Origin: Anaeramoeba ignava BMAN
Lineage: Eukaryota; Protista; Anaeramoebae
Direction of reading: 5' to 3'
DNA: 64,000 bases
Assembly (NCBI GenBank): GCA_028826165.1
Contig: JAPDFW010000072.1
Coordinates: forward strand, 310,001 to 374,000
This document shows, piece by piece, positions 13,293 to 56,800 of this stretch. The translations under genes and the position numbers were made by a program. The notes below the pieces were generated by a model. It ran no database searches and was not told the DNA's origin. It was given only the letters and a program-made list of their open reading frames with translations. Within the stretch, counting starts at the first letter, position 1. Each line of letters opens with the position of its first letter.

Positions 13293-16200
13293 ATGATAAC
13301 TAATTCCTTTATAATTGAAAAATCAAATCAATTTACAAATCAAAATCAAAATCAAAATCAAAATCAAAATCAAAATCAAAATCAAAATCAACTTGTAAAT
13401 CAAAATCAAAATCAAAATCAAAATCAAAATCAAAATTTAAATCAAAATCAAAATCAAAATCAAAATCAACTTGTAAATCAAAATCAACTTGTAAATCAAA
13501 ATTTAAATCAAAATCAAAATTTAAATCAAAATCAATTTACAAATCAAAATCAACTTGTAAATCAAAATCAAAATCAACTTGTAAATCAAAATCAATTTCA
13601 ATTTGTAAATCAAAACCAAAATCAATTTACAAATCAAAATCAACTTGGAAATCAAATTGGAAATCAATTTCAAAATCAAAATCAAAATCAAAATCAAAAT
13701 CAAAATCAAAATCAAAGTCAAAATCAAAATCAAAATCAAAATCAATTTCAAAATCAAAATCAAAATCAATTTCAAAATCAAATTGGAAATCAACTTGGAA
13801 ATCAAAATCAAAATCAAAATCAATTTACAAATCAAAATCAAAATTTAAATTTAAATCAACTTGGAAATCAAAATCAAAATCAAAATCAAAATCAAAATCA
13901 AAATCAAAATTTAAATCAAAATCAAAATAAAATGCAATTATCACCTTTAACACTAAAATCTCCAAATTTAATAAACCAAAACAAAAATTTATTTCAAAAT
14001 CAAAATAAAACATACTCAAATAATACAAATTTTGGATCAAATTTGAATTCAAATATTTTCAACAAACAAAACAAATCAGAACCATTTACTTTATCAACAT
14101 CAAAAAAATTATTTCCAAAACCCAATTTAAAACCAGTTCAATTGTTTCAAAGACAAAATTTAAATTTAAATTTAAATTCAAATTCAAATTCAAATTCAAA
14201 TTCAAATTCCCAACAAGAAATTGATTTAACTTTCAATACAAATAATAATTCAAATTCAAAATTAAATTCAATTTCAATTTCAAATTCAAATAATAATATG
14301 AATCCTAATCAAATCATAAATTCAAATAAATTCTCTTTTTCACAAAAAAATACTTTATTATCTCAACAACCTTTAAAATCTCAAAATTTATCTCCCTTTT
14401 CAACTCCAAATTTAAAAAATTCTCTAAATTTAAAATCTTCTTTATTAAAAACATCACCTCCTTCTAATTTCAAACCATTAACCAACGAGAAAATTCCTTT
14501 ATTACAATCAAATTCATTTCCAAAAAAACTTGATTCAAATTTTTCTATTCAAAATCAAAATGATTCAAATAATTTTTCACAACCATTTCAATCACAATCA
14601 AATGAGAAAAAAATATTTTCAAACTCAAACAACACAAATAAAGCTCAAAATCAATTTATAAATCAAAATCAAAATATAAATCAAAATCAAAATCAAAATA
14701 TAAATCAAAATTTAAATAAAGATCAACATATTACAATTAATAACAATCATATCCGAAATAATATTTATGTTACATCTGATACACAATTCAGTTTCCAAAA
14801 CCAAAACCAAACCCGAAATAATCAACCTCAAACATTCTTTAATCAAAACCAAAAAATTACAGTAAACTCAAATTACCAAAAATTCGCAAATTTATTTGAT
14901 AAGGATGAAGAAAAAGAAATAGAAGAAAAACCTAAAAAAATATGGACAAGTACATTTGATAAATCCTTCTCACCACTTGGATTATCAAACAGTAAATTGG
15001 ATCCAAATATTTCACTATCAATGAGTAATAAAAATACACACGAAAAACTAGAAATAGATTTGGAAGCAGCAAAAACATGGATTTTCCCAATAAATAAGCC
15101 CAAAAGAGATTACCAATTCAGTATTTGCTATACATCATTGTTATATAATACACTAGTATCCTTACCAACAGGATTAGGCAAAACATTTATTGCAGGAGTT
15201 TTGATGTATAATTTTTACAGATGGTTTCCAAACGGAAAATTAATTTTTATGGCACCAACAAAAGCACTTGTTTCTCAACAAGTAATGGCAGTTTATGAGA
15301 CTGTTGGATTGCCTTTGGAAGAAACTGAGGAAATGACAGGAGATATAAACCCAGAAAAACGCGTCAATTTATGGAAAACAAAGAGGATTTTTTATGTCAC
15401 TCCTCAGTCACTCAAACACGATCTGGAAAATGAAATTTGTCCTTCTCATCTTGTTGTTTGCGTTATTGTTGATGAAGCTCATAGAAGTATGGGCAAATAT
15501 CCTTATACAGAAGTTGTCAAGATGCTTTTATTTAATAGTTCTAATTTCCGCATCCTTGCTTTGAGTGCAACACCAGGAACTTCCAAAGAAAAAATACAGC
15601 AAATTGTCAATAATCTTCTCATTGCAAAAATCGAAAATCGAGATGAAAGTGATAGCGATGTTTCCAAATATTTGCATGATAAAACAATCGAAACATACAC
15701 AATTTCACTCCAACAAAACAACGAATTAATCTTGTTGAAGAATATATTTAAGGATATTATTGAATCCCAATTGAGGGAATTATATGATAGTGATTTGATA
15801 TATTCTGCAAATATAGATGTAATGAATACATCCAGAGTATATGGAGCATATTTCAACTTGAAAAAAACACAACAAACACAAAAAAAACAAGATTTGCCAC
15901 AAAATGCACTTATAACTGCTCTTTCCCATTTTGGATTGGTTCTCACTCTTTATAAGGCATGGGATAGACTCATTCAGCATGGAATACTATCTTTTTATGA
16001 ATTTATCCAGAAGAATTACATCGATTGCCCAAAAAATCAACTCAGAAAAAAGGAAAAAGTGTTGAATCACCCTTCTTTTTTGAAATTGCAACAAATGCTT
16101 CCCAAAATTATCAATGGATTAACTAACTCCCATCCCAAACTTAAAAAATTGTATGAGATTGTTTCCTCTCATTTTGAAGAGAAAATGAAACAAGGAAATG

Positions 16201-19200
16201 AATTCTACCAAAATTCGCGAGTCATTGTTTTCTCTTCTTTTCGTGATTCTGTTGATGTTATTACATCCACTCTTTCTCAAAATCAACTGATCAAAGTAAT
16301 GCCTTTTATTGGGCAAAGTTCAAAGAAGGGAAGTCGTGGATTAACCAGCAAAGAACAGAAATTTGTCATCGCAAAATTTAAGGAAGGTGGTTTTAACACT
16401 TTGGTATCAACATCAGTGCATCCCGATGAATATATTATTTTAATGAATCCTCATAATGAAATTGTGATTGAGAAAATTGGAAAATTTGTAGAAATGTTTC
16501 TTGTTCCAAAAAATCAAGATCCAAAAACCAAAAAAATACCAAAAATCAATGCAAAAAGAAACATTTCCACTCAAAATTGGAAAAGTCTTTCTTGCGACCA
16601 ATTTGGTTCTAATGTTGGTTTTTATCCAATTACTCATGTCCATCGACATGTTAGAAGAAGTAATGTTGTTGATGTAAAACTTTCAAATGGGTTTTCAACT
16701 CTTGTAACTGAAGATCATAGTTTGTTTACAGCATACAACAACAATAACAACCAACAGAAACTTGTATCATTTAAACCTGAATTAGGAAAGTTGTGTAATT
16801 ATTGTGTTCAAATTCCTGATATTGACTCGAAAAAAACAAGTATTGATTTAGTCTCAGAAATGCTCAAAGAAACAAATTCTTTTCCTTCTTCAAAATTAAT
16901 TTGCGTTTTCCAAAACTTGGATCAAATCAAAATGCAAGATTTATATGAAGATTTCCAATGTTTATCCAATAAAAAATGTTATTCACATAAAATTCCAAAA
17001 TTGGTCAATTCTCAATTTATTATTAAAATGGAAGAAAATGGAATTGAACAATTTATTATTACCCAAAAAGGGAAAAAATATTTTGGAGCAATTTTGTGGT
17101 TAATGGAAAATGTATATTTTAATTTGAAATTCAGAAGATATTCACGAATATTTACAGAAAACAACAAAAAAATAAACTTTAACTTTAACGAACCTAAATT
17201 TATCAAAAAGAACTTTTCTCAAAAAATTTATTTTGGAACAAATCAAAACCAAAATGTCCCAAGATTTTTGGAAATAAACCCGCAACTTTTGAGATTTATT
17301 GCAAATTTTCTTGTTTATGGAGAAGTTATTGATTCCCCACAAAGCAAGAATAAATTAATCCAGTTTAAAAATGTGAGAACAGAAAAACAGAAAAGAAAAA
17401 TTATTGAAAATGCAACAGGATTCATTGATTGTAAAAAATGGCGAGAACGAAGTGATTTAAATGGAGAAATTTTAGAAATTGAAGGAGATTTAATTTTATC
17501 AATATTCCAAATGTGTTTTCATTGTGATCCTCAAGAACAAATGAAAGAAATTCCAAGATTTATTTTTTCGTTGGGAAAAAAATACAAAAAAGAATTTATA
17601 AATGAGATTTTCAATTCAAATTTTCAAGTCAATGATAAAATGTTGCGAACATCAAGTAGAAAATTAATTATTGGGATAATTTTATTAATAAGACAAACAG
17701 AAATTTTTTCAAGAAAGGAAATTAGTATTAAAACTAAAGCATATAAAGATGGGAAAGGAGTAATTTTTGAGGTTGGAAAAAAGAAAAGAGAAAAAGAACA
17801 AGAAAATGAAACATTATTTAGTAAGATTGATAGTATTGATATTATTGAGAGGCAACCAGAATTTGTTTATGATATTTCTGTATTTGGAACAGAAAAATTT
17901 TTTGGAGGAGTTGGATTAATTAATATTCACAATTCTGTTGGTGAGGAAGGACTTGATATTGGAGAAGTTGATTTGATTGTTTGTTATGATTCGTCGAGTG
18001 ATCCAAAACGTAATATTCAACGATATGGACGAACAGGAAGGAAAAGAGAAGGAAGAGTAGTAATTCTTGCGACAGAAAATTCAGAAGAATTAACATTGAA
18101 AAAAAGTGCAACCAAAAAGAAAGCAATTGCAAAAGAATTAAGTCATGTTGATCAATTTGAGTTATATTCAAGAAATCCAAGAATGATTCCTGATGATATT
18201 AAGCCAGTTTGTGTTGAAAAGAAGTTGGAAATTCTTCCTTTGAATTTTTCGGATGTGAAAAAGAAGTTTAAAAGAAGAAGTCCACAAAAAAGATCAACTA
18301 ATTTACCTTTTTTATCAAAATCAGAAATTGATTTTTTGCAATCGAGGTATCATATTATGGAATATGAATTTGGGAGTTTTAAATTTGATATTGAGAAAAA
18401 TATTGAAGATCAAAAAATTTTAAATGATTGCTATGAAGTTGGGCATTCAAATAGAACAAAATTATTGAATGAATTTCTTTTATATTTTGAGAATAATCGA
18501 TTAAATACAAATTTAGAAACAAATTTAGAAACAAATTTAGAAACAAATTTAGAAACAAATTTAGAAACAAATTTAGAAAGAAATTTAAATACAAATTTAG
18601 AAAGAAATTTAGAATCAAATTTAGAATCAAATTTAAAAAGAAATTTAAATTCAAATTTAGAAAGAAATTTAAATTCAAATTTAGAAAGAAATTTAAATTC
18701 AAATTTAGAAAGAAATTTAAATTCAAATTTAGAAAGAAATTTAAATTCAAATTTAGAAAGAAATTTAAATACAAATTTAGAAAGAAATTTAAATTCAAAT
18801 TTAGAATCAAATTTAGAATCAAATTTAGAATCAAATTTAGAAAGAAATTTAGATACAAATTTAGAAAGAAATTTAAATACAAATTTAGAATCAAATTTAG
18901 AATCAAATTTAGAAAGAAATTTAGAATCAAATTTAGAATCAAATTTAGAAACAAATTCAAATACAAATTTAAATACAAATTTAAATACAAATTTAGAAAC
19001 AAATCCAAAAGAAGGAAAAAACAAAAAGGAAGATAATAAAGATAAGAAAAACAAACATAAGCATAAACATAAGCATAAACATAAACATAAACATAAACAT
19101 AAACGCAAACATAAACACAAACATAAACACAAGCATAAAAATAAAAATAAAGATAAAGATAAAAATAAAAATAAAAATAAAGATAAAGATAAAGATAAAG

Positions 19201-19892
19201 ATAAAAATAAAAATAAAGATAAAGATAAAGATAAAGATAAAACAATGGTTCAAAAGCAACTTGAATTCGAAAAAACACCAAAAATTCTTCCATTTCAAAG
19301 TACAATTGATAAGATTAAAAATTTTTCAAACAATTTCAACAAAGAAATTCAAATTGAAAATGAAAATTTAAATCAAATTCAAAATGAAAATTTAAATCAA
19401 ATTCAAAATGAAAATTTAAATCAAGATCAAATTGATAATGATAATGATATTATTAAAAATGAAGATGATTATGATAATTATTATGATATAGATTACGATA
19501 TGGATTACGATATGGATTATGATATTGATTATGATAATGAAATTAATGATGATTATGATATGGATGAAGAATTAAGTCAAAATGAAAATCAAATTGAAAA
19601 TCAAATTCAAAATCAAATTGAAAATCAAAATCAAAATCAAAATCAAAATCAAATTCAAAATCAAAATCAAAATCAAATTCAAAATCAAATTGAAAATCAA
19701 AATCAAATTGAAAATCAAATTGAAAATCAAATTGAAATTCAAAATCAAAATGAAATCGAAAATCAAAATGAAAATCAAAATCAAAATAAGATTCAATCAA
19801 GATTTGCTAAATTTTTGAATGTTAATAAGAAATATGAAAATATGAAAAATTCTTTTGGTTCACATAATATTTCATCTTTATTTAAAAAATAA
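13293..19892 (+). CDS. FANCM: FANCM/Mph1/Hef-family DEAH helicase precursor containing an intein; long N/Q-rich termini; no ERCC4 nuclease domain seen
   Basis: PKRDYQ, LPTGLGKT, FMAPTK, VDEAH, LALSATPG, HPKL, FIGQ, LVST|SVGEEGLDIGEVDLIVCYD, QRYGRTGRKREG. Confidence 0.92.
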   Translation: MITNSFIIEKSNQFTNQNQNQNQNQNQNQNQNQLVNQNQNQNQNQNQNLNQNQNQNQNQLVNQNQLVNQNLNQNQNLNQNQFTNQNQLVNQNQNQLVNQNQFQFVNQNQNQFTNQNQLGNQIGNQFQNQNQNQNQNQNQNQSQNQNQNQNQFQNQNQNQFQNQIGNQLGNQNQNQNQFTNQNQNLNLNQLGNQNQNQNQNQNQNQNLNQNQNKMQLSPLTLKSPNLINQNKNLFQNQNKTYSNNTNFGSNLNSNIFNKQNKSEPFTLSTSKKLFPKPNLKPVQLFQRQNLNLNLNSNSNSNSNSNSQQEIDLTFNTNNNSNSKLNSISISNSNNNMNPNQIINSNKFSFSQKNTLLSQQPLKSQNLSPFSTPNLKNSLNLKSSLLKTSPPSNFKPLTNEKIPLLQSNSFPKKLDSNFSIQNQNDSNNFSQPFQSQSNEKKIFSNSNNTNKAQNQFINQNQNINQNQNQNINQNLNKDQHITINNNHIRNNIYVTSDTQFSFQNQNQTRNNQPQTFFNQNQKITVNSNYQKFANLFDKDEEKEIEEKPKKIWTSTFDKSFSPLGLSNSKLDPNISLSMSNKNTHEKLEIDLEAAKTWIFPINKPKRDYQFSICYTSLLYNTLVSLPTGLGKTFIAGVLMYNFYRWFPNGKLIFMAPTKALVSQQVMAVYETVGLPLEETEEMTGDINPEKRVNLWKTKRIFYVTPQSLKHDLENEICPSHLVVCVIVDEAHRSMGKYPYTEVVKMLLFNSSNFRILALSATPGTSKEKIQQIVNNLLIAKIENRDESDSDVSKYLHDKTIETYTISLQQNNELILLKNIFKDIIESQLRELYDSDLIYSANIDVMNTSRVYGAYFNLKKTQQTQKKQDLPQNALITALSHFGLVLTLYKAWDRLIQHGILSFYEFIQKNYIDCPKNQLRKKEKVLNHPSFLKLQQMLPKIINGLTNSHPKLKKLYEIVSSHFEEKMKQGNEFYQNSRVIVFSSFRDSVDVITSTLSQNQLIKVMPFIGQSSKKGSRGLTSKEQKFVIAKFKEGGFNTLVSTSVHPDEYIILMNPHNEIVIEKIGKFVEMFLVPKNQDPKTKKIPKINAKRNISTQNWKSLSCDQFGSNVGFYPITHVHRHVRRSNVVDVKLSNGFSTLVTEDHSLFTAYNNNNNQQKLVSFKPELGKLCNYCVQIPDIDSKKTSIDLVSEMLKETNSFPSSKLICVFQNLDQIKMQDLYEDFQCLSNKKCYSHKIPKLVNSQFIIKMEENGIEQFIITQKGKKYFGAILWLMENVYFNLKFRRYSRIFTENNKKINFNFNEPKFIKKNFSQKIYFGTNQNQNVPRFLEINPQLLRFIANFLVYGEVIDSPQSKNKLIQFKNVRTEKQKRKIIENATGFIDCKKWRERSDLNGEILEIEGDLILSIFQMCFHCDPQEQMKEIPRFIFSLGKKYKKEFINEIFNSNFQVNDKMLRTSSRKLIIGIILLIRQTEIFSRKEISIKTKAYKDGKGVIFEVGKKKREKEQENETLFSKIDSIDIIERQPEFVYDISVFGTEKFFGGVGLINIHNSVGEEGLDIGEVDLIVCYDSSSDPKRNIQRYGRTGRKREGRVVILATENSEELTLKKSATKKKAIAKELSHVDQFELYSRNPRMIPDDIKPVCVEKKLEILPLNFSDVKKKFKRRSPQKRSTNLPFLSKSEIDFLQSRYHIMEYEFGSFKFDIEKNIEDQKILNDCYEVGHSNRTKLLNEFLLYFENNRLNTNLETNLETNLETNLETNLETNLERNLNTNLERNLESNLESNLKRNLNSNLERNLNSNLERNLNSNLERNLNSNLERNLNSNLERNLNTNLERNLNSNLESNLESNLESNLERNLDTNLERNLNTNLESNLESNLERNLESNLESNLETNSNTNLNTNLNTNLETNPKEGKNKKEDNKDKKNKHKHKHKHKHKHKHKHKRKHKHKHKHKHKNKNKDKDKNKNKNKDKDKDKDKNKNKDKDKDKDKTMVQKQLEFEKTPKILPFQSTIDKIKNFSNNFNKEIQIENENLNQIQNENLNQIQNENLNQDQIDNDNDIIKNEDDYDNYYDIDYDMDYDMDYDIDYDNEINDDYDMDEELSQNENQIENQIQNQIENQNQNQNQNQIQNQNQNQIQNQIENQNQIENQIENQIEIQNQNEIENQNENQNQNKIQSRFAKFLNVNKKYENMKNSFGSHNISSLFKK
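16413..17933 (+). mobile_element. Intein (507 aa, Ser1...His-Asn, +1 Ser) with degenerate LAGLIDADG homing endonuclease, in FANCM helicase motif V
   Basis: Removing it restores TLVST-SVGEEGLDI. Block A SVHPDEYI, block B LVTEDHSLF, block F EFVYDISVFGTEKFFGG, block G LINIHN/S. LAGLIDADG-position remnants are LLRFIANFLVYG and KEFINEIFNSN. Confidence 0.93.
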
Positions 19893-20074
19893 TAATTGAA
19901 AATAATTAGTAAATTTCCCAAATTCAAATTCAATTCAAATTCAAATTCAATTCAAATTCAATTCAAATTCAAATTCAAATTCAAATTCAAAATCAAAATA
20001 AATTTTTCATTTTGTTTAAATTTTTCATTTTTCATTTTTCATTTTTCATTTTTCATTTTTCATTTTTATTTAAA

Positions 20075-22122
20075 ATGATAAATTTCGAAAAAAAGAAAAA
20101 AAAAACAACAATTAAAAAAAAATTAATTAAAGAAAATCCAAAAGATAATTTTAAAATTGAAGTTCATATTTATAATTTACTTTGTGAATTTAAAGGAAAA
20201 CAAATTCCTCAAAAAATTTTATATCCATTTTCAACCAATTTTGTTGAACCAAGTTTAGATAAAATTTTAAAAATATTTTTACAAAAACTTGCAAGAATTC
20301 AATTTCGTTTAAAGAAAAAAAAAGTAGTTGATAGAAGAAAAATACGTTATGTTGTTGGTTTTAGGTTAATTTTAATTTTGAAATGAATTTTGAAATGAAT
20401 TTTAATTTAGAAATGAATTTAAATTTAGAAATGAATTTTAATTTTGAAATGAATTTTAATATTGAAATTAATTTTAATTTAGAAATGAATTTTAATATTG
20501 AAATGAATTTTAATATTGAAATTAATTTTAATTTAGAAATTAATTTTAATTTAGAAATGAATTTTAATATTGAAATGAATTTTAATTTTATAAATAGAGA
20601 AGTTGTTTCATATTTAAAAGTGAAAAAAATAAAAATTGTTATTCTTGCATCAGATATTGATCCAAGTAAAACATTATTTGATTTAATTGAAAAAATAAGA
20701 GCAGCACAAATACCAATAATAGTTGGATTAACTCGGAATAAATTATCAAAAGTTATCAGCACAAGAGGTCGTTCAAGTTTAGTTGCTATTCTTAATCCAA
20801 ATGGTGCTGATCAAGTTTTTAAAAAAATTGATGCATTTTTTCTTCGTAGTCAAAATAATTATTTCAAAATTGCTGTTGATTTTATTATCCAAAAATTTAA
20901 TGATTTACATAATTTGGATTTTTCCGTTTATTCTATTAATTCTTTGGAAAATATTCAACTTAAAAATCAATTTAAATCAAATTACTTTCTTCAAGGAATT
21001 GAACATTTCCAAACCCTTCCCATTTTAAATCAAAATCAAAATCAAAATCAAAATCAAAATCAAAATCAAAATGAAAATCAAATTGAAAATCAAAATCAAA
21101 ATCAAATTGAAAATCAAAATCAAAATGAAAATGAAATTGAAAATCAAATTGAAAATCAAATTGAAAATCAAAATCAAAATCAAAATCAAATTGAAAATCA
21201 AAATCAAAATCAAATTGAAAATCAAAATGAAAATCAAATTCAAAATCAAAATCAAATTGAAAATCAAATTGAAAATCAAATTGAAAATCAAATTCAAAAT
21301 CAAAATCAAATTGAAAATCAAAATCAAATTGAAAATCAAATTGAAAATCAAATTGAAAATCAAATTGAAAATCAAATTGAAAATCAAATTGAAAATCAAA
21401 TTGAAAATCAAATTGAAAATCAAATTGAAAATCAAATTGAAAATCAAATTGAAAATCAAATTGAAAATCAAATTGAAAATCAAATTGAAAATCAAATTGA
21501 AAATCAAAATCAAAATCAAATTGAAAATCAAAATGAAAATGAAAATCAAAATCAAATTGAAAATCAAATTGAAAATCAAATTGAAAATCAAATTGAAAAT
21601 CAAAATGAAAATCAAAATCAAATTGAAAATCAAAATCAAATTGAAAATCAAAATCAAATTGAAAATCAAAATCAAATTGAAAATCAAATTCAAAATCAAA
21701 ATCAAATTGAAAATCAAAATCAAATTGAAAATCAAAATCAAAATCAAAATCAAAATCAAATTGAAATTGAAAATCAAATTGAAAATCAAATTGAAAATCA
21801 AAATCAAAATCAAATTGAAAATCAAAATCAAGTTGAAAATCAAATTGAAAATCAAAATCAAATTGAAAATCAAAATCAAATTGAAAATCAAATTGAAAAT
21901 CAAAATCAAATTGAAAATCAAATTGAAAATCAAATTGAAAATCAAATTGAAAATCAAAATCAAATTGAAAATCAAAATCCAATTAAAATTATTCTTCATT
22001 TTCTTAATTTTCTTGGAAAAGAAATTCATGAAATGCCAATAGAATTAATAACAAAATTAAAAGAAAATATTCAGAATTCACCTTTTCCTGGAATTTTTAA
22101 TCAAATAGAAAATCAAAAATAG
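20075..22122 (+). CDS. SECISBP2: SECIS-binding protein 2-like L7Ae protein (exons 20075-20364, 20598-22122) with a ~310-aa NQIE repeat tail
   Basis: Spliced sequence LDKILKIFLQKLARIQFRL..RYVVGFREVVSYLKVKKIKIVILA..IPIIVGLTRNKLSK..SLVAILNPNGADQVFKKI resembles the SBP2 RNA-binding region as recalled (LLKELVRFQDR..RLVLGLREVLKHLKL..VSVVGIFSYDGA). GT-AG intron at 20365-20597. Confidence 0.8.
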
Positions 22123-22203
22123 AAAATAAAATAAAATGAAATGGAATAAATTTGAATCCATTTTTTTTATTTAAAAAATTGAAAATTCTATATAATTTTT
22201 TTT

Positions 22204-22264
22204 GTTAGAATTTCAAAAAAACCCCTTCCAATTAGGATTTCAGGGAATCTTATCATAGATCTAA
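22204..22264 (-). promoter_or_regulatory. Eukaryotic SECIS element (type II)
   Basis: The minus strand reads TTAGATCT-ATGA-TAAGATTCCCTG-AAA-TCCTAATTGGA-AGGGGTTTTTTT-GA-AATTCTAAC, i.e. ATGA-N12-AA-N24-GA. Helix II contains CCCU/AGGG, the apical mini-stem is UCC/GGA, and helix I is UUAGA/UCUAA. Confidence 0.8.
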
Positions 22265-22355
22265 AAAAAAAAATTTAAGAAAATTCAAAAAAAAAAGTGT
22301 CAAAAAAAAATTGTTCAAGAAAGTTTTAAATTTTAAATTTTAAATTTTAAATTGT

Positions 22356-22550
22356 TTAATTTCATCCTTCTGAACATTCGGATGAAGTTTGACTTCGACT
22401 TTTTCTTGATTTTCTTGAACTTTTTTCTTTTAACATTGGTTGTGTTCGTTTTGTTCTTGTTGTTCTTGTTGTTCTTGAATTGTTAGAATTTGAACATCTT
22501 GGTTTTCCATCATCATCTCCAAAACAACATGCAAATAACATTCAGCACAT
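22356..22550 (-). CDS. Candidate small selenoprotein, 64 aa, in-frame TGA at codons 3 and 63
   Basis: MC(U)MLFACCFGDDDGKPRCSNSNNSRTTRTTRTKRTQPML...SSRKSRKSRSQTSSECSEG(U)N-TAA. The ATG has AAA context, the stretch is GC-richer than its flanks, and a SECIS lies ~105 nt past the last TGA. Confidence 0.72.
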
Positions 22551-22739
22551 TTTAATTTTATCTTTAAATTTTTTTTTGTTTTGTGTTTTAGGGAAAATTA
22601 AAACAAAAAAGAAATAAAAAATGAAATAAAAAAAGAAAAATGAAAAATGAAAAATGAAAAATGAAAAATGATTTTTAATTTTTTTTTTAATAAATTTAAA
22701 AAAATCACACGTGTTCTTATATTTTTTTTATCCCCTCTT

Positions 22740-24120
22740 TTTATTTATATTTTTAATTAGATTTTTATTTATATTTTTAATTATATTTCAAATTAAATTC
22801 TATTCCACTTTTTATTTATATTTTTATTTATATTTTTAATTAGATTATTATTTATATTTTTATTTAGATTTCAAATTAAATTCTATTCCACTTTTTATTT
22901 ATATTTTTATTTATATTTTTATTTAGATTATTATTTATATTTTTATTTAGATTTTATTTATATTTTTATTTATATTTTTATTTAGATTTTTATTTAGATT
23001 TCAAATAAATTCTATTCCACTTATTATTTATATTTTTATTTAGATTTTTATTTATATTTTTATTTAGATTTTTATTTATATTATTATTTAGATTATTATT
23101 GAGAACATTTCAATTTTTATTTATATTTTTATTTAGATTTCAAATTAAATTCTATTCCACTTTTTATTTATATTTATATTTAGATTATTATTTATATTTT
23201 TATTTATATTTTTATTTAGATTATTATTGAGAACATTTCAATTTTTATTTATATTTTTATTTAGATTTCAAATTAAATTCTATTCCACTTTTTATTTATA
23301 TTATTATTTATATTTATATTTATATTTTTATTTTTATTTATATTTTTATTTAGATTATTATTTATATTTTTATTTAGATTATTATTTAGATTATTATTTA
23401 TATTTTTATTTATATTTTTATTTATATTTTTATTTAGATTATTATTTATATTTTTATTTATATTTTTATTTAGATTATTATTTATATTTTTATTTATATT
23501 TTTATTTATATTTTTATTTAGATTATTATTTATATTTTTATTTAGATTATTATTTATATTATTATTTATATTTTTATTTAGATTTTTATTTAGATTTTTA
23601 TTTAGATTATTATTTAGATTTTTATTTATATTTCAAATTAAATTATATTCCACTTTTTATTTAGATTATTATTTAGATTATTATTGAGAACATTTCAATT
23701 TTTATTTATATTTTTATTTAGATTTCAAATTAAATTCTATTCCACTTTTTATTTATATTTCTATTTATATTTTTATTTATATTTTTATTTATATTATTAT
23801 TTATATTTTTAATTAGATTTATATTTAGATTATTATTTATATTTCAAATTAAATTCTATTCCACTTTTTATTTAGATTATTATTTATATTTATATTTATA
23901 TTTTTATTTATATTTTTATTTATATTTTTATTTATATTTTTATTTAGATTTTTATTTATATTTATATTTATATTTTTATTTATATTTTTATTTATATTTT
24001 TATTTAGATTTTTATTTATATTATTATTTAGATTTATATTTATATTTTTATTTATATTTTTATTTAGATTTTTATTTATATTTTTATTTATATTTTTATT
24101 TATTTTTTGTTCCACTTTTT
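22740..24120. repeat. Compound AT-rich tandem repeat (12-bp TATTTATATTTT/TATTTAGATTAT units punctuated by AAATTCTATTCCACTTTTT)
   Basis: Seen directly; lies between the divergent selenoprotein candidate and copine. Confidence 0.85.
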
Positions 24121-24467
24121 TTTGAATAAGTAAATAAAATTAAATTTAAAAAAGAATTTTAAATAAAAATTAAATTAAAAAGGGGTTAGAAAAAGAAAAA
24201 GAAAAAGGGAAATTATCTTATTTTATTTATTTCAAAAAATTTAAATTAAAAAGGAGAAGAAAAAAAAAAAGGAGAAAAAAAAAATGATCAAAAAAAAAAA
24301 AGAAAAAAAAAACTTTTTAATTAAATTTGACTTATCAAAACAAAAACAACAAAACAAAAAAAACAAAACAAAAAAAAAATTTAAATTTCATTTTTTTATT
24401 TTTATTTTTATTTTTATTTTTATTATTATTATTAAATTTATTAAAGAAGTAAAATAACAAAGAAGAA

Positions 24468-27400
24468 ATGCAACAAAACGCACAATTTGAATTTGCAGAT
24501 GATGGTTATTTTTCGAAAGTAGAAATACATGTGAGTTGCACAAAGTTAGTAGACCTTGACACGTTTACAAAAAGTGATCCAATGGTAGTTATATTTACAC
24601 CAGCACCAGGTCAACGTGGAAGATGGATGGAACATGATAGAACTGAGATTGTTTGGTATTTTTTTTCTTGAAGTTTTTTTTCCTTTTTTTTCTTTTTAAT
24701 TTTTTTTATTTAAAATTTTTTGAATTGAATTTAATTTAAATTTGGAATTCTCAATTTATTTTAATAATTATTTAATTCAAACTATTTTAAAAATTTATAA
24801 TTATTTAATTCAAATTATTTTAAAAATTTATAATTATTTAATTAAAATTATTTTAAAAATTTATAATTATTTTATTCAAACTATTTTAAAAATTTATAAT
24901 TATTTAATTCAAACTATTTTAAAAATTTATAATTATTTTATTAAAACTATTTTAAAAATTTACAATTATTTAATTAAAATTATTTAAAAATTTATTATTA
25001 TTTAATTAAAATTATTTAAAAATTTATAATTATTTAATTAAAACTATTTTAAAATTTTTATTATTATTTAATTAAAATTATTTTAAAAATTTATAATTAT
25101 TTAATTAAAATTATTTTAAAAATTTACAATTATTTAATTAAAATTATTTAAAAATTTATAATTATTTTATTCAAACTATTTTAAAAATTTATAATTATTT
25201 AATTAAAACTATTTTAAAAATTTATAATTATTTAATTCAAACTATTTAAAAAAATTTATAATTATTTTATTAAAACTATTTAAAAAATTTACAATTATTT
25301 AATTAAAACTATTTTAAAATTTATTATTATTTAATTAAAATTATTTTAAAAATTTACAATTATTTAATTAAAATTATTTTAAAAATTTATAATTATTTTA
25401 TTCAAACTATTTTAAAAATTTATAATTATTTAATTAAAACTATTTAAAAATTTATTATTATTTAATTAAAACTATTTTAAAAATTTATAATTATTTAATT
25501 AAAACTATTTAAAATTCTTAAAAAATTTTTCTCCTTTTCTTTTACTTTTTCTTTCTTTTTAGGAATGATTTAAATCCACGTTTTGTTAAAGCTATTACAA
25601 TGGATTATCATTTTGAAGAAAATCAACCTTTAAAATTTGTTGTTTATCATGTTGTTTCAGAAAAAAAACCTTTATCTCAACAAAGAGTTATTGGAGAAGC
25701 TGAATGTATGTTATCTCAATTAGTTTCAGCTAGAACTGGTGCTTTTACAAAAGATTTAACGTAAAAAATAAAAAAAATAAAAAAAATGATGATTAAAAAT
25801 GATTAAAAATGAGTCATTATTAAAAATTGCTTTTTTTTAATTAATATTTTTTTTTTTCATTTGATTAGTCATCCAAGTAAACCAAATCAAAGTAGAGGAA
25901 AAATTAATATTTTTTGTGAAGAAGTTCGTGCAATGAGTTATATAGCTAAATTCCGATTCTGTGCAAAAAAACTTGATAAAAAAGATTTTTTTGGAAAAAG
26001 TGATCCATTCCTTGTTATAAGTAAGTGTAGAGAAGGGAATGTGTATGTACCAGTTCATCAAACAGAATTTTACAAAAGAACATTAAACCCAACATGGAAA
26101 CCATTTTCAATTACTGTTCAGAAACTTTGCAATGGAGATTTTGATCGACCACTTAATTTAGAAGTAATTTTGAAATGAATTAAAAAAATATTAAATAAAT
26201 AAATAAATAAATTAAATAAATATTAAATAAATATATTAAATAAATATTAAATAAATAAATATATTAAATAAATATTAAATAAATAAATATATTAAATAAA
26301 TATTAAATATATTAAATAAATAAATATTAAATAAATATATTAAATAAATAAACTTTATTAAAGGTTTACGATTGGAATAGAAACTCAGCAGCTGATTTCA
26401 TCGGTACAGCTAAAACTTCACTTCGAGAACTTCACGAAGGAAACAAAAGAACATTTGATCTAATCAACCCAGAAAAAAAACGGAAAAAGAGAAAATACAA
26501 AAATTCTGGAGTATTACATTTACTTCATTGCGAATTAATTCAAGAATATTCATTTTTAGATTATATCGCTGGAGGATGCGATATATCATTAATTGTAGCA
26601 ATAGATTTCACAGCATCCAATGGAAATCCTCAGATGCCTAACAGTTTACATTACATGGGAAACCCATACGAGCCTAACGAGTATGTAAAAGCAATCACAG
26701 CCGTAGGAGAAATTTTAGCATATTACGATTCAGACAAGATGTTTCCAGTATATGGATTTGGAGCGAAGATTCCACCACGCGGAGATGTGAGCCATTGCTT
26801 CCCATTGAATTTCAATTGGGAGAACGCAGAGGTTCAAGGAGTTGGAGGAATTTTACAATCATATCAATTCGCACTTCAACAAGTCCGATTACACGGACCG
26901 ACAATATTTGCAAACATCATTCGTGTTGCAGCACAATTTGCAAGCCAACAAGTGACACAACAGAACCAACGATTCTTTATTCTTCTTATTATTACAGACG
27001 GTGTTATCAACGACATGGAGGCAACCATTGATGAGATTGTTCGCGCTTCCGTTCTTCCACTTGCAATCGTTATTGTCGGCGTTGGAAATGCTGATTTTTC
27101 AAATATGGATGTTCTTGATGCTGATGATGTTCCTTTAAAATCTTCTTGGGGAGAAACTATGCATCGTGATATCGTTAATTTTATCCCTTTTTCTGAGTAT
27201 AAAAACAAACCAGTTTCCGAACTTGCTAAAGCAACTTTGGAGGAAATTCCTCTCCAATTAACTTCCTTTTTCAAAATGAAAGGAATTGTTCCAAATCAAA
27301 GACCTCAAATGCAACAAGTCCAACAAATGCAAACTAATCAACAAATGCCTAACCAACAAATGCCTAACCAACCAATGCAACCAAATCAACAAGTTCAACA

Positions 27401-51876: not shown

Positions 51877-53579
51877 ATGATCAATAATAAATTTCCTTTA
51901 GAATCTTATATTATTCTTCCAAATACAAAATCCAATCATAATCTTTCTCATTCAAATACAATTTTAAAATCATCTTTTGATTTTCAAAGTTTTATTCAAA
52001 AAAATTCAAATTCAAATTCAAATTCAAATTCAAAAAAAAATATTCAAAAAAAATTCCACAAAAATTTTCAAAATGATTTTCAAAAAAATAAATTTAAATC
52101 AAATAATTTCAATTTATTTCTCAATAATGAAAACTCTCAAAATCAAAAAAAACAAAAGATCACATCAAAACTTTCAATAATCTCAAAATTTTTAAAATCA
52201 AATATTGAACCAGTTAATCCGTTATCTCCAATTCAAAAAAATAAATCAAAAAAACACAATAATTTTCAATTTACAAAATTAACATCAATTCAAAATGTCA
52301 AAAATTCAAATTCAAATTCAAATTCAAATTCTGAAATAATTTCTAATTATAATGATCGATATTTATCTGATAAACATCTTCAAAATTTGATTATCAAAGA
52401 GAATACAACTTTTATATCAAAATTTAACGATCTTATTGAATCAAAAGAAAAATTAAATTTAAGAAAAAAAGTAGTAAAAGAAATATCAAATGTTTGTTTT
52501 GTATTACATTTAGAGAAGCAAACATTCTTTCTTGCAGTTGAAATTTGTGATAAATTCCTTTCCAAAATAGAAATTTCAATTAAAAATCCAAATAAAAATG
52601 AAAATCAAAATGAAATTGAAAATGAAAATCAAAATCAAAATGAAAATCAAAATCAAATTCAAATTAAAAATCAAAATTATTTAAATGATCCAAAAATCAT
52701 CTCTTTGGCTTCCTCTTTAATTGCTATGAAATTCCAAGAAGAAGAAATGGTTTCTATAAATGATTTTGTTCAATCACAAAAAAATCAAAAAAATCAAAAA
52801 AATCAAAAAAATCAAAAAATTACAAAAGAAAATTTAATTGAAATGGAAAATAAAATTCTAAATACAATTAATTTTCATATTCCTTCTTTTACTTGCAATA
52901 ACTTTTTATTACTTTTCATTCAGCGTTATTGTTGGCTTGGTTCTTCAAATCAAAAAGAGGTTCAAATTGTTAAAGAATTTTCAAACAGATTTTCTACTTT
53001 TAAATTTTGGACTTCAAAATCAAAAAATAATTCCAAAAAATCTTTCCATCATCTCAATAATGATTTATACAAAGATAAAATTTTGGATGATTTTATGAAT
53101 GAAATGATTTCAGATATTAATTTAAATCATTATGAAAAATGTCAACTTGTTGAAAAACAATTTTCCATTTTGAAATTTCCAAATGATTTATATTCAAATA
53201 TTTTAAGATTATTAACATTTGCAATTTTTGATCCAAAAAGTCTTGAATTCAAACCAAGTATTCTAACAGCATCTGCTTTTTCTTTATTTTTTTCTCATTC
53301 ACAAGTTTTAGAATTAACTGGTAAATTAATTTAAAATTTAAAATCCAAAAAATTAAATTTGATTTTATTTTTTTTTTTTTTAATTTATTTTATTTAGGTT
53401 ATTCTCAAAAAGATTTAAAAAAATGTATTGAATGGATTTCTAGAATTTATCAAATTATTCAAAAAAAAAGTGATCGTTTATTTACTTTATCTTTAATTTG
53501 GCAAAATATTGATTTTTCAAATCATCAACAACTTCATATTCATACTCCAATGATTGATGAATTTTATAATAATTTATAA
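51877..53579 (+). CDS. Cyclin (possibly cyclin E-like); exons 51877-53320, 53398-53579
   Basis: Cyclin box LRKKVV..LHLEKQTFFLAVEICDKFL..ASSLIAMKFQE..EMENKILNTINF; SLEFKPSILTASA; LTG|YSQKDLKKCIEWI. Confidence 0.8.
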
Positions 53580-53809
53580 TAAAATTTTAAAAATTTTCAA
53601 TATTTTTAAATTTCATTTTTTTAATGACTTTCGTTCCCCAATTAAATTCAAAAACTCAATTTAATTTGGTTTTTAAAAAGTCAAAGATTCTTTTTTTTTA
53701 AATTAAAAAAAAATTCAAAATTTATTTTTCATTTTTTTTTTCCTTTTTTTTTTATAATTTAATTTATATTAAAATTAAAAAATATTCCAAAATTCTTTTC
53801 TAATTTTAA

Positions 53810-56800
53810 ATGCCTCGTTTTTATGGATGTTATTTATTAACATCTTTAAATGAAAAATATAAAGATCATGCTTATATTGGATTTACAAGAAATCCGTTAA
53901 GAAGAATTAGACAACATAATGGAGAAATTAAAGGAGGTGCAAAAAAAACTTCTTTAAAAAGGCCTTGGGAATTAGTTTGTGTTATTTTTGGTTTTCCTTC
54001 TAGTTGTTTAGCACTTAGATTTGAATGTAAAAATTAAAATGAATTAGAAAATGAATTATAAAATCAATTATAAAATCAATTATAAAATCAATTATAAAAT
54101 CAATTAGAAAATGAATTAGAAAATGAATTAGAAAATCAATTAGAAAATGAATTAGAAAATGAATTAGAAAATCAATTAGAAAATAAAAATGAAAATGAAT
54201 TAGAAAATCAATTAGAAAATTAAAATCAAAATCAATTAGAAAATCAATATTAAAATAAAAATTAAAATCAAAATCAAAATCAAAATCAAAATCAAAATCA
54301 AAATCAAAATCAATTAAAAAATTAAAATCAAAATCAAAATCAAAATCAAAATCAAAATCAAAATCAAAATAAAAATAAAAATAAAAATAAAAATCAAATT
54401 CAAAATTAAAATCAAAATCAAAATCAAAATCAAAATCAAAAATCAATTAGAAAATCAAAATCAAAATCAAAATCAAAATCAAAATCAAAATCAATTAAAA
54501 TTAAAATCAAAACCAAAACCAAAATCAAAATAAAAATCAAAATCAAAATCAAAATCAAAATCAAAATAAAAATAAAATTAAAATCAAAATTAAAACCAAA
54601 ATAAAAATAAAAATAAAATTAAAATCAAAACCAAAATCAAAATCAAAATTAAAATAAAAATTAAAATTAAAATCAAAATTAAAATTAAAATCAAAATCAA
54701 AATCAAAATTAAAATAAAAATCAAAATCAAAATTAAAATCAAAATGAAAATCAAAATCAAAACCAAAATAAAAATAAAAATAAAATTAAAATTAAAAAAT
54801 CAAAATCAAAATCAAAATTAAAATTAAAAAATCAATATAAAAATCAAAATTAAAATCAAAACCAAAACCAAAATCAAAATTAAAATAAAAATTAAAATTA
54901 AAATCAAAATCAAAATAAAAATAAAAATAAAAATCAAAATCAAAACCAAAATCAAAATCAAAATCAAAATAAAAATCAAAATCAAAATCAAAATCAAAAT
55001 AAAAATCAAAATCAAAATAAAAATCAAAATCAAAATCAAAATCAAAATCAAAATCAAAATCAAAATTAAAATTAAAATTAAAATTAAAATTAAAATCAAT
55101 ATTAAAATAAAAATAAAAATTAAAATTAAAATCAAAATCAAAATCAAAATCAAAATTAAAATCAAAATAAAAATTAAAATTAAAATCAAAATCAAAATCA
55201 AAATCAAAATTAAAATCAAAATAAAAATCAAAATAAAAATTAAAATGAATTAGAAAATCAAAATTAAAATCAAAATCAAAAATCAAAATCTAAATCAAAA
55301 TTAAAATCAAAATCAAAATCAAAATCAAAATCAAAATAAAAATTAAAATCAAAATCAAAATCAAAATTAAAATCAAAATCAAAATAAAAATTAAAATTAA
55401 AATCAAAATCAAATTCAAAATAAAAATTAAAATCAAAATCAAAATTAAAATTAAAATCAAAATCAAAATCAAAATAAAAATTAAAATAAAAATCAATATC
55501 AAAATCAAAATCAAAATCAAAATTAAAATCAAAATTAAAATTAAAATCAAAATTAAAATCAAAATCAAAATTAAAATCAAAATCAAAATCAAAATCAAAA
55601 TTAAAATTAAAATTAAAATTAAAAATCAAAATTAAAATCAAAATTAAAATCAAAATCAAAATTAAAATCAAAATCAAAATCAAAATCAATATTAAAATTA
55701 AAATCAAAATCAATATTAAAATTAAAATCAAAATCAAAATTAAAATCAAAATCAAAACCAAAACCAAAACCAAAATCAAAATCAAAATCAAAATTAAAAT
55801 CAAAATCAATTAAAAAATCAAAATCAAAATCAAAATCAAAATCAAAATTAAAATCAAAATTAAAATAAAAATCAAAATCAAAATAAAAATTAAAAAATCA
55901 ATATAAAAATCAAAATTAAAATTAAAAAATCAATATAAAAAATCGAAAAAAGGGACTTGGCAAAACCCATACAAATCTTCAAAATTAAAAGAATTCCAAG
56001 AAAAAGGAATTTCAGGATTTGGAAATATTCACAAAGTAAAAGCAAAAGCAAGAATACTTTTTGAAATTTTAAATTCATCTCCATGGAAAAGATTACCATT
56101 ACACATTCGCTTTTTCTCAGATCAACGAATGGAACTAAGACAAAATTGTCCACAACAACCAGAACACATGAGCCTTGTATTAACAAACACTTACGAATTT
56201 GCAAAGGAAATGAAATTCACAGACGCACTTGATGCGATTGGTGAAAAAAAATCTCAATCAAATTCAAATACAAATTCATCAACAACAGAGAAGAATTTGG
56301 GAAAAAACATTAAGAATAAAGAAAATATAAAAAGCGAAAGTGAATCAAGTGAGGAATCAAGTCAAGAATCAAGTGAAAACGATAATGAATGTGAATTAGG
56401 GAAAAATCAACCGTTTGTTTTATCTCAATTAAGTACTCAATGTTTTGAATGTAGTGAACCAATAAATCCTCAAAATCCTTATGTAGAATGCCCATTTTGC
56501 GCCTCAAAAGTCCATCTTCTTTGTATGGCAAGGATTTTCTTATCAAAATCACCTCAGAAATTATTACCAACTAAAGGAAATTGTCCTTGTTGTGGAAACC
56601 GTTTAATTTGGGGTGATATTGTTCGTGTTTCTCAAAAAGGAAAGCCTGGTTTTGAACCCTTTGTCCCAAAAACTAATTCCCATTCTTCTCGTTCTTTAAC
56701 TTTTTCTGATTCTCTTCCTAATCTTAATCCTCCTCAAATAAACCATCTTGATCAAAATGTAAATTCTAATGATCTTCCTCAAAAGAAAAATAAAACAAGA

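What the first reader, a model, noticed from the sequence alone, without database searches (positions are those of the whole stretch)
22204..22550. Hidden two-UGA micro-selenoprotein gene with a canonical SECIS
Seen: a 195-nt minus-strand frame (22550-22356), absent from the ORF track, reads MC*MLFACCFGDDDGKPRC...SSECSEG*N-TAA with TGA at codons 3 and 63. About 105 nt downstream is ATGA-N12-AA-N24-GA, which folds by eye into a type II SECIS (UGAU/UGAA quartet, CCCU/AGGG helix, AAA bulge, UCC/GGA mini-stem). Known: this is the eukaryotic Sec-insertion signal, and a near-terminal G-U-x-stop is typical of SelK and SelS. Inference: a 64-aa basic, disordered selenoprotein with both TGAs next to Cys (C-U and CxxG-U) and a possibly palmitoylated CC N-terminus but no TM helix. 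I do not recognise it as any described family.
Basis: partly seen in the sequence, partly recalled or inferred. Interest (0 to 1): 0.92.

Follow-up and report, generated by a model that had tools for sequence, protein, structure and literature searches.

The report
Candidate orphan small selenoprotein gene
A tiny, isolated gene-like island in a very AT-rich protist genome ends in Gly-UGA-Asn-UAA and is followed 105 nt later by a hairpin that scores like this genome's own verified selenocysteine-insertion signals, so it is a credible but unproven new selenoprotein with no known relatives.

Summary
The sequence is as described. The minus-strand frame 22550-22356 has TGA at codons 3 and 63. A type II SECIS-shaped hairpin lies at 22265-22204, 105 nt after the second TGA.

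"Canonical" is too strong. The hairpin scores 29 bits on Rfam SECIS_1, below the 35-bit cut-off, and has U.U mismatches. But six SECIS elements that I tied to real selenoprotein genes in this genome score 21-39.5 bits with the same AUGA-N12-AAA layout. These genes are three Rdx/SelW-like genes, thioredoxin reductase, SPS2 and a SelK-like gene. tRNA-Sec is present.

The 59-codon ORF fills an isolated GC island exactly, is longer than chance (p about 0.01) and has coding-like codon usage. However, frame +1 looks equally codon-like, although it is closed by a stop.

I found no homologue or paralogue anywhere, and no RNA data could be used.

The Sec reading of codon 3 is unsupported. That TGA may simply close a two-codon upstream ORF. 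Long microsatellite introns in this genome mean an upstream exon cannot be excluded.

Verdict: a plausible new orphan selenoprotein with one C-terminal Sec, about 0.6. The two-Sec version is about 0.15.

Other first-reader notes of this scan flag further small selenoprotein candidates in this genome. I did not examine them.

The parts
22600..22745 (-). Possible promoter or leader: a small GC-containing box, an A/T-rich TATA-like stretch, a roughly 75-nt T-rich tract, then an A-rich stretch of about 45 nt up to the first ATG. Alternatively it is a polypyrimidine tract with the first AG of an intron 3' end.
   Evidence: Read directly. The function is inferred only.
22542..22550 (-). ATG-TGC-TGA, in frame with and directly abutting the main ATG. 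It is either the N-terminal Met-Cys-Sec or a two-codon upstream ORF.
   Evidence: The first ATG has an A-rich context (AAA before ATG). No test could tell the two readings apart.
22365..22541 (-). 59 sense codons, starting MLFACCFG and ending ECSEG. The product is basic, Ser/Thr/Arg/Lys-rich and predicted to be mostly disordered.
   Evidence: The ORF is listed. It fills the GC island exactly. Codon score is 11.6 bits, the 28th percentile of true frames, and only 0.3% of off-frame windows reach it. ORF length gives p = 0.009. pI is about 9.9 with K+R = 14. AF2 mean pLDDT is 55.
22362..22364 (-). TGA, the putative selenocysteine codon, preceded by GGA (Gly).
   Evidence: The same GGA-TGA context occurs at the Sec codon of the three Rdx-like selenoprotein genes of this genome.
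22356..22361 (-). AAT TAA: Asn followed by the likely true stop. The GC island ends here.
22204..22265 (-). SECIS-like type II hairpin. AUGA is at 22256-22253, AAA at 22240-22238, the mini-stem is UCC/GGA, and the 3' UGAA has its GA at 22214-22213.
   Evidence: Rfam SECIS_1 gives 29 bits over the full-length model. The layout is the same as in six verified SECIS elements of this genome.
22165..22175 (-). AATAAA-containing stretch about 30 nt after the hairpin, a possible poly(A) signal.
   Evidence: This motif is common by chance in such AT-rich DNA.

Best explanation
This is a single-exon gene for a lineage-specific micro-selenoprotein of about 61 residues.

Translation starts at the ATG at 22541, or at the ATG three codons upstream. 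It runs through a basic, disordered Ser/Thr/Arg/Lys-rich chain. At UGA 22364-22362 the 3'-UTR SECIS hairpin, 105 nt downstream, recruits the Sec machinery (an SBP2-type protein, eEFSec and tRNA-Sec), so that Sec is inserted. Asn and a UAA stop follow.

The product would carry an exposed C-terminal Cys-x3-Sec pair (C-S-E-G-U-N). That pair could cycle as a selenenylsulfide, as the flexible C-terminal Sec tails of thioredoxin reductase, SelK and SelS do.

Shown here: the sequence features, the presence of the Sec machinery, and the likeness of the hairpin to this genome's own SECIS elements.

Inferred only: transcription, translation, Sec insertion and any redox role.
For: 1. The genome decodes Sec.
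- tRNA-Sec scores 70.3 bits and ARAGORN calls tRNA-SeC with anticodon TCA.
- SPS2 has an in-frame TGA.
- Thioredoxin reductase ends TGC-TGA-GGT-TAA.

2. The hairpin scores like this genome's verified SECIS elements.
- The candidate scores 29.0 bits on SECIS_1.
- The verified ones score 39.5, 32.2, 26.4 and 21.1 bits, 31.9 bits for the SelK-like gene and 28.1 bits for SPS2.
- All six share AUGA-N12-AAA with an 11-bp helix II.
- In the genome-wide listing, every other hit at E <= 10 sits 3' of a known selenoprotein ORF.
- It is the only SECIS_1 hit in the 64-kb window.

3. Its deviations occur in verified elements too.
- U before AUGA also occurs in the SelK-like SECIS.
- U after AUGA also occurs in the third Rdx gene's SECIS.

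4. The upper stem is unusually stable. It folds at -8.9 kcal/mol against -4.4 to -6.1 for five verified elements (-8.6 for the SelK-like one). Only 1 of 124 descriptor hits in 40 Mb of Markov-simulated sequence is as stable.

5. The ORF looks like a real coding unit.
- It coincides with an isolated 30% GC island in 5-15% GC surroundings.
- It is longer than chance, p = 0.009.
- Its codon usage lies within the true-gene range.

6. Of 18 genome matches to the linear pattern GGN-TGA-NNN-TAA...ATGA-N12-AAA, only this one has a long open frame combined with a stable stem.

7. Of 11 matches to a SECIS sequence pattern, only thioredoxin reductase, SelW2 and this one form helix II by my reading of the matched sequences.
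Against: - No homologue or paralogue was found in any search, so conservation around the UGA is untested.
- The hairpin is below Rfam's gathering score. It has two U.U mismatches in helix II, which SECISearch3 grading penalises (PMC3753652).
- A covariance model trained on four of the genome's own SECIS elements gives it only 19.8 bits, barely above chance hits of 19.0 and 18.6 bits in the window.
- A plain structural descriptor without the stability term finds about 3 chance hits per Mb.
- 6-9% of window positions lie 40-400 nt 3' of some TGA-ended ORF of at least 50 codons.
- Frame +1 of the same island scores as well by codon usage (13.8 + 13.0 bits), although a TAA closes it.
Confidence: 0.6

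Rival explanations
1. Chance coincidence. The island is an ordinary small ORF, or not a gene at all, that simply stops at TGA. The downstream hairpin is an AU-rich stem-loop that happens to carry AUGA, AAA and GA.
For: - The hairpin is below the Rfam cut-off.
- The whole-hairpin fold z-score is only -1.58.
- The own-genome model gives 19.8 bits, close to background.
- Descriptor hits are frequent in this base composition.
- 6-9% of positions lie just 3' of a TGA-ended ORF.
- There is no conservation and no expression evidence.
Against: - The Rfam genome-wide E-value is about 0.02, and all other listed hits are true SECIS elements.
- The stem is as stable as only about 1 chance hit per 40 Mb.
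- The combined chance expectation, hairpin times position, is roughly 0.002-0.2 per genome.
- The ORF fits the GC island exactly.
- Among 17 other matches to the linear pattern, none resembles it.
Confidence: 0.2
2. The SECIS is real but the gene model is wrong. The island would be the last exon of a larger selenoprotein gene whose upstream exon or exons lie beyond the 1.4-kb AT satellite at 22740-24120. Reading frame 0 would make the first TGA an internal Sec. Reading frame +1 would end the protein at the TAA at 22432-22430, with the Sec codon in an unseen exon.
For: - Verified selenoprotein genes of this genome are split by kb-long introns of about 0% GC microsatellite: the SelK-like gene and the Rdx genes.
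- A T-rich tract followed by the first AG lies just upstream of the island.
- Frame +1 has good codon scores and a CxxC motif.
Against: - No exon-like GC island lies between 22551 and the divergent copine gene at 24468.
- The AG is preceded by an A-rich stretch, not a T-rich one.
- Frame +1 would leave about 70 nt of 30% GC sequence as 3' UTR.
- The frame 0 ORF starts with ATG exactly at the edge of the island.
Confidence: 0.1
3. One reading: both UGAs are decoded, giving a 64-residue protein with an N-terminal Met-Cys-Sec and a C-terminal C-x3-U.
For: - The first ATG has the better A-rich context and appears to be the first AUG after the putative leader.
- TGC-TGA is the same Cys-Sec codon pair as at the thioredoxin reductase C-terminus of this genome.
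- One SECIS can serve several UGAs. MSP has two Sec residues (PMC2375036).
Against: - There is no evidence of any kind for decoding at codon 3.
- ATG-TGC-TGA-ATG reads equally well as a minimal uORF or as untranslated leader.
- Some SECIS elements of C-terminal-Sec proteins support Sec insertion only near the natural C-terminal position (PMC3737529).
Confidence: 0.15

Closest known systems
SelK / SelS type selenoproteins (small, disordered, Sec one to three residues from the C-terminus)
   Same: Small size, a polar and basic disordered chain, a Gly-Sec near the C-terminus, and a 3'-UTR type II SECIS.
   Different: - There is no TM helix and no Pfam SelK_SelG or other match.
- There is no Gly-rich tail.
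- The genome has its own SelK-like gene, ending GGGG-U-GGGNC, on another contig.
- That SelK and SelS end in G-U-x is my own recollection and was not tested here.
Thioredoxin reductase C-terminal redox tail (GCUG)
   Same: A penultimate Sec with a nearby Cys on a flexible C-terminal end. The UGA lies close to the true stop.
   Different: The Cys is four residues away (C-S-E-G-U) rather than adjacent, and there is no flavoprotein domain. The genome's own thioredoxin reductase is a separate gene on another contig.
Lineage-specific orphan selenoproteins of protists (for example Plasmodium Sel1-Sel4)
   Same: Short proteins without homologues outside their lineage, recognised only from a SECIS plus an in-frame UGA.
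   Different: Those were backed by conservation among related species and by labelling. Here no relative is available. Lobanov et al. 2006 is cited in PMC3753652 but is not held in the library, so the details are from memory.
Dictyostelium discoideum selenoproteome (SPS2, SelK, Sep15, MSP, DI)
   Same: An AT-rich amoeba-like genome whose SECIS elements are all type II with an unpaired AAA. U-U mismatches in the stem are reported (PMC2375036).
   Different: - This genome has a different set: thioredoxin reductase and several Rdx/SelW-like genes.
- It lacks the conserved UGUA before the SECIS core.
- It is 42.8 Mb in 147 contigs.
- Its FANCM is only about 40% identical to anything in the databases.

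Membership tests
Eukaryotic SECIS element (Rfam RF00031) | Kink-turn core UGAN / KGAW (AUGA on the 5' side, GA on the 3' side) | tested here: met
   AUGA-U at 22256-22252 and UGAA with GA at 22214-22213. The core consensus is taken from PMC3753652.
Eukaryotic SECIS element (Rfam RF00031) | Conserved unpaired A's at a fixed distance above the core, with a helix II of about 9-12 bp | tested here: met
   AAA lies 12 nt after AUGA, as in all six verified SECIS elements of this genome. Helix II pairs at 8 of 10 positions with U.U mismatches, against 9-10 of 10 in the five scored by that count.
Eukaryotic SECIS element (Rfam RF00031) | Score at or above the curated gathering threshold (35 bits) | tested here: not met
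   The candidate scores 29 bits. Five of the six verified SECIS elements of this genome are also below 35 bits: 32.2, 31.9, 28.1, 26.4 and 21.1.
Eukaryotic SECIS element (Rfam RF00031) | Supports UGA recoding | not testable with these tools
   This needs a reporter assay or 75Se labelling.
Selenoprotein gene (generic) | An in-frame UGA upstream of a SECIS on the same strand, in a genome with Sec machinery | tested here: met
   The UGA lies 105 nt upstream of the core. tRNA-Sec, a Sec-containing SPS2 and a Sec-containing thioredoxin reductase are present.
Selenoprotein gene (generic) | Homologues conserved across the UGA, with UGA or Cys at the aligned position | tested here: inconclusive
   No homologue was found in protein, metagenome, own-genome or Atlas searches. 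No close relative of this organism is in the databases.
Selenoprotein gene (generic) | A transcript that covers both the ORF and the SECIS | not testable with these tools
SelK/SelG (PF10961) | Profile match and an N-terminal TM helix | tested here: not met
   Pfam finds no family at E <= 1. The maximum KD19 is -0.31.
Rdx family (SelW/SelT/SelH, PF10262) | A CxxU motif in a thioredoxin-like fold | tested here: not met
   There is no Pfam match. The AF2 model is mostly disordered, with pLDDT 55.

The most novel reading that the evidence does not exclude
A new selenoprotein family with two Sec residues in about 64 residues: a Cys-Sec pair at positions 2-3 and a C-x3-Sec pair at the C-terminus, on a disordered basic chain. 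In this reading the ATG-TGC-TGA-ATG start also acts as a selenium-dependent switch between two N-termini. It would be one of the smallest selenoproteins and would have a Sec codon nearer to the start codon than any I know of.
Probability: 0.12. Interest if true: 0.75.

Novelty: new member of a known kind. Interest (0 to 1): 0.45.

Why it matters
If real, this adds a new, very small selenoprotein family with no Cys-containing relatives, found in a poorly sampled AT-rich protist lineage.

Such orphans bear on how new selenoproteins arise and on what the smallest useful Sec-containing peptide is.

The locus also lies tail to tail with an L7Ae-domain, SBP2-like gene. That would be a curious pairing of machinery and client.

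As it stands it is a prediction of the kind that SECIS-based pipelines produce. Many such predictions fail without conservation or labelling data.

Tried and rejected
Searches that found nothing:
- Homology searches with the 59-aa ORF: word-indexed protein database, own genome in six frames, JGI metagenome contigs, ESM Atlas.
- DNA of the island against the own genome. Only simple-repeat matches came back.

Synteny route: I used the neighbours to look for relatives.
- The L7Ae neighbour gave no close hits.
- FANCM gave only about 40% identity.
- So no related locus could be fetched.

Expression:
- Only one run of unknown kind holds the locus.
- Read laying failed first on a repeat and then on a filter at 22260-22296.
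- Two whole-window RNA-model scans by reference did cover those places as part of the window.
- The output printed them.

Own-genome covariance model R1, built from 4 SECIS elements:
- It is overfitted to their AU-rich sequence.
- The candidate scored 19.8 bits, near background.
- Its two extra genome hits lack AUGA.
- I rejected it as a discriminator.

Corrected figures:
- An early codon score of 4.5 bits and a UGA-to-SECIS distance of 102 nt wrongly included the stop codon or used coordinates 3 nt off.
- The corrected values are 11.6 bits and 105 nt.

Rejected ideas:
- I rejected a SelK identity after finding the genome's real SelK-like gene.
- A T/G-rich run on the minus strand near 24390 reads as a hydrophobic peptide. 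It has no usable splice donor, so I did not take it as an exon.

Full report
**Observation**

On the minus strand the frame 22550-22356 reads ATG TGC TGA ATG, then 58 further sense codons, then TGA AAT TAA.
- The first TGA is at 22544-22542 and the second at 22364-22362.
- The ATG-initiated ORF 22541-22362 (59 aa) is listed by the mechanical ORF tool.
- 105 nt after the second TGA comes AUGA (22256-22253). It is followed by 12 nt, AAA (22240-22238), a 3-bp UCC/GGA mini-stem, a G-rich return strand and UGAA, whose GA is at 22214-22213.
- The minimum-energy fold gives that type II shape.

So the described letters are all there.

**Context**

The window is extremely AT-rich. Intergenic DNA is 3-15% GC and exons are about 27-40% GC. 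It belongs to a 42.8-Mb, 147-contig assembly.

The organism is Dictyostelium-like in style but is not D. discoideum.
- Its selenoprotein set differs from the published one of SPS2, SelK, Sep15, MSP and DI (PMC2375036).
- Its FANCM-like helicase is only about 40% identical to anything in the protein database.
- No close relative is therefore available.

**The genome uses selenocysteine**

- tRNA-Sec scores 70.3 bits, and ARAGORN calls tRNA-SeC with anticodon TCA.
- SPS2 carries an in-frame TGA.
- A thioredoxin reductase ends TGC-TGA-GGT-TAA. Its Pyr_redox_dim domain scores 106 bits.
- Three Rdx/SelW-like genes have GGA-TGA at the expected Sec position.
- A SelK-like gene ends GGGG-U-GGGNC.

**How good is the hairpin?**

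Rfam SECIS_1 gives 29.0 bits. That is below the 35-bit gathering score. The E-value is about 0.02 for the whole genome.

The six SECIS elements that I could tie to verifiable selenoprotein genes score as follows:

| Score (bits) | Gene |
|---|---|
| 39.5 | Rdx/SelW-like |
| 32.2 | thioredoxin reductase |
| 31.9 | SelK-like |
| 28.1 | SPS2 |
| 26.4 | Rdx/SelW-like |
| 21.1 | Rdx/SelW-like |

- The candidate therefore sits in the middle of the true range. Failing the cut-off is normal for this genome.
- All six share AUGA-N12-AAA and an 11-bp helix II.
- The candidate's U before AUGA recurs in the SelK-like element. Its U after AUGA recurs in the third Rdx element.
- It is the only SECIS_1 hit in the 64-kb window.

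Weak points of the hairpin:
- Helix II pairs at 8 of 10 positions, with U.U mismatches. SECISearch3 grading penalises this.
- The whole-hairpin z-score is -1.58.
- A covariance model trained on four of the genome's own elements gives only 19.8 bits, close to the next window hits. I judge that model overfitted, because its extra genome hits lack AUGA.

**Chance estimates**

- A structural descriptor that recovers five of the verified elements (the sixth, found later with a slightly looser version, was not run through it) finds about 3 chance hits per Mb of third-order Markov sequence.
- Only 1 of 124 such hits in 40 Mb has an upper stem as stable as the candidate's. The candidate folds at -8.9 kcal/mol, five verified elements at -4.4 to -6.1, and the SelK-like one at -8.6.
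- That is about 2 per genome, with wide error.
- 6-9% of positions lie 40-400 nt 3' of a TGA-ended ORF of at least 50 codons.
- Combined, the chance expectation is roughly 0.002-0.2 per genome.

Two pattern controls on the real genome agree.
- Of 11 matches to a SECIS-like sequence pattern, only thioredoxin reductase, SelW2 and the candidate form helix II, by my reading of the matched sequences.
- Of 18 matches to GGN-TGA-NNN-TAA...ATGA-N12-AAA, only the candidate has a long open frame and a stable stem.
- Both patterns were written after seeing the candidate, so they are illustrative only.

**The ORF**

- It coincides with an isolated island of about 30% GC. The edges of the island are the ATGs and the TGA-AAT-TAA.
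- Dinucleotide shuffles give an ORF this long in 0.9% of trials for three frames, or 2.2% for six frames.
- Codon usage scores 11.6 bits for the 59 codons. That is the 28th percentile of true coding windows of this window's genes, and only 0.3% of off-frame windows reach it.
- A caveat: frame +1, which is Q/E/N-rich, scores as well (13.8 + 13.0 bits). It is closed by a TAA at 22432-22430.
- The product is basic (pI about 9.9), Ser/Thr/Arg/Lys-rich, lacks a TM helix, and is predicted to be largely disordered.

**What is missing**

- No homologue or paralogue was found. Conservation across the UGA is therefore untested.
- No RNA run holds the locus, and read laying could not be used.

**The first UGA**

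Nothing distinguishes Sec at codon 3 from a two-codon uORF or an untranslated leader.
- For the Sec reading: the first ATG has the more A-rich context, and TGC-TGA is the same codon pair as at the thioredoxin reductase C-terminus.
- Against it: SECIS elements of some C-terminal-Sec proteins restrict insertion to the C-terminal region (PMC3737529).

**Gene model caveat**

Verified selenoprotein genes here are split by kb-long introns of about 0% GC microsatellite. A 1.4-kb satellite lies just upstream of the island.
- I see no exon-like island between it and the divergent copine gene at 24468.
- The island starts with ATG.
- A single-exon gene is therefore the simplest model, but an upstream exon is not excluded.

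**Verdict**

| Reading | Probability |
|---|---|
| Lineage-specific selenoprotein with one C-terminal Sec | about 0.6 |
| Chance coincidence | about 0.2 |
| Real SECIS with a different gene model | about 0.1 |

- The two-Sec version is a sub-case, at about 0.12-0.15.
- It belongs to no described family. Pfam finds nothing, and SelK and Rdx membership tests fail.
- It is a new member of a known kind, if real.

Whole-window RNA-model scans by reference did include it as part of the window.

Noticed in passing
window 20012-22122 (+): An L7Ae-domain gene with long N/Q/E repeats lies tail to tail with the candidate. Its stop is about 80 nt from the end of the hairpin. The exon junction reads like the SBP2 RNA-binding motif (R-x-V-V-G-F-R / E-V-V-x-Y-L-K). 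Sequence support is weak: Pfam L7Ae scores 22.3 bits, and in the PDB eL8 gives E = 0.005 while SBP2 (7zjw) gives E = 0.09. No close homologue exists in the databases.
   Followed up: partly
L038:7513-9830 (-), = G000:C15 about 53000-55330: A SelK-like selenoprotein gene lies directly downstream of an Rdx/SelW-like one. A short first exon with a hydrophobic stretch is followed by an intron of roughly 1.9 kb of about 0% GC microsatellite. The last exon ends GGGG-U-GGGNC. Its SECIS scores 31.9 bits and was missed by the genome-wide filter.
   Followed up: yes
L011 (G000:C64:1028733-1031981): The SPS2 gene has an in-frame TGA. Its SECIS at L011:2837-2898 scores 28.1 bits and was missed by the genome-wide and 3-kb scans. 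A C/D-box-snoRNA-like element (UGAUGA...CUGA, about 25 bits to SNORD79/63) sits in its last intron at L011:2199-2273.
   Followed up: partly
L001, L004, L025 (G000:C137, C15, C1): Three Rdx/SelW-like selenoprotein genes have a C-G-G-U motif split by an intron just before GGA-TGA. Each has its own SECIS.
   Followed up: yes
window 22740-24120: A 1.4-kb AT satellite made of 8-10-nt units (AAATAAAAAT / ATAAATCTAA types). It is punctuated about every 120 nt, though irregularly, by a conserved box of about 30 nt (AAAAAGTGGAATAGAATTTAATTTGAAAT). It lies between the candidate and the copine gene.
   Followed up: no
window 13293-19892 (+): A 2199-aa FANCM-like helicase ORF has best database hits of only about 40% identity, spread over chytrids, Anaeramoeba, Balamuthia and animals. 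The organism therefore has no close sequenced relative in the protein database.
   Followed up: no
G000:C126:535403-536359: Three identical pattern matches lie 456 nt apart, which points to a tandem repeat of 456-nt units.
   Followed up: no
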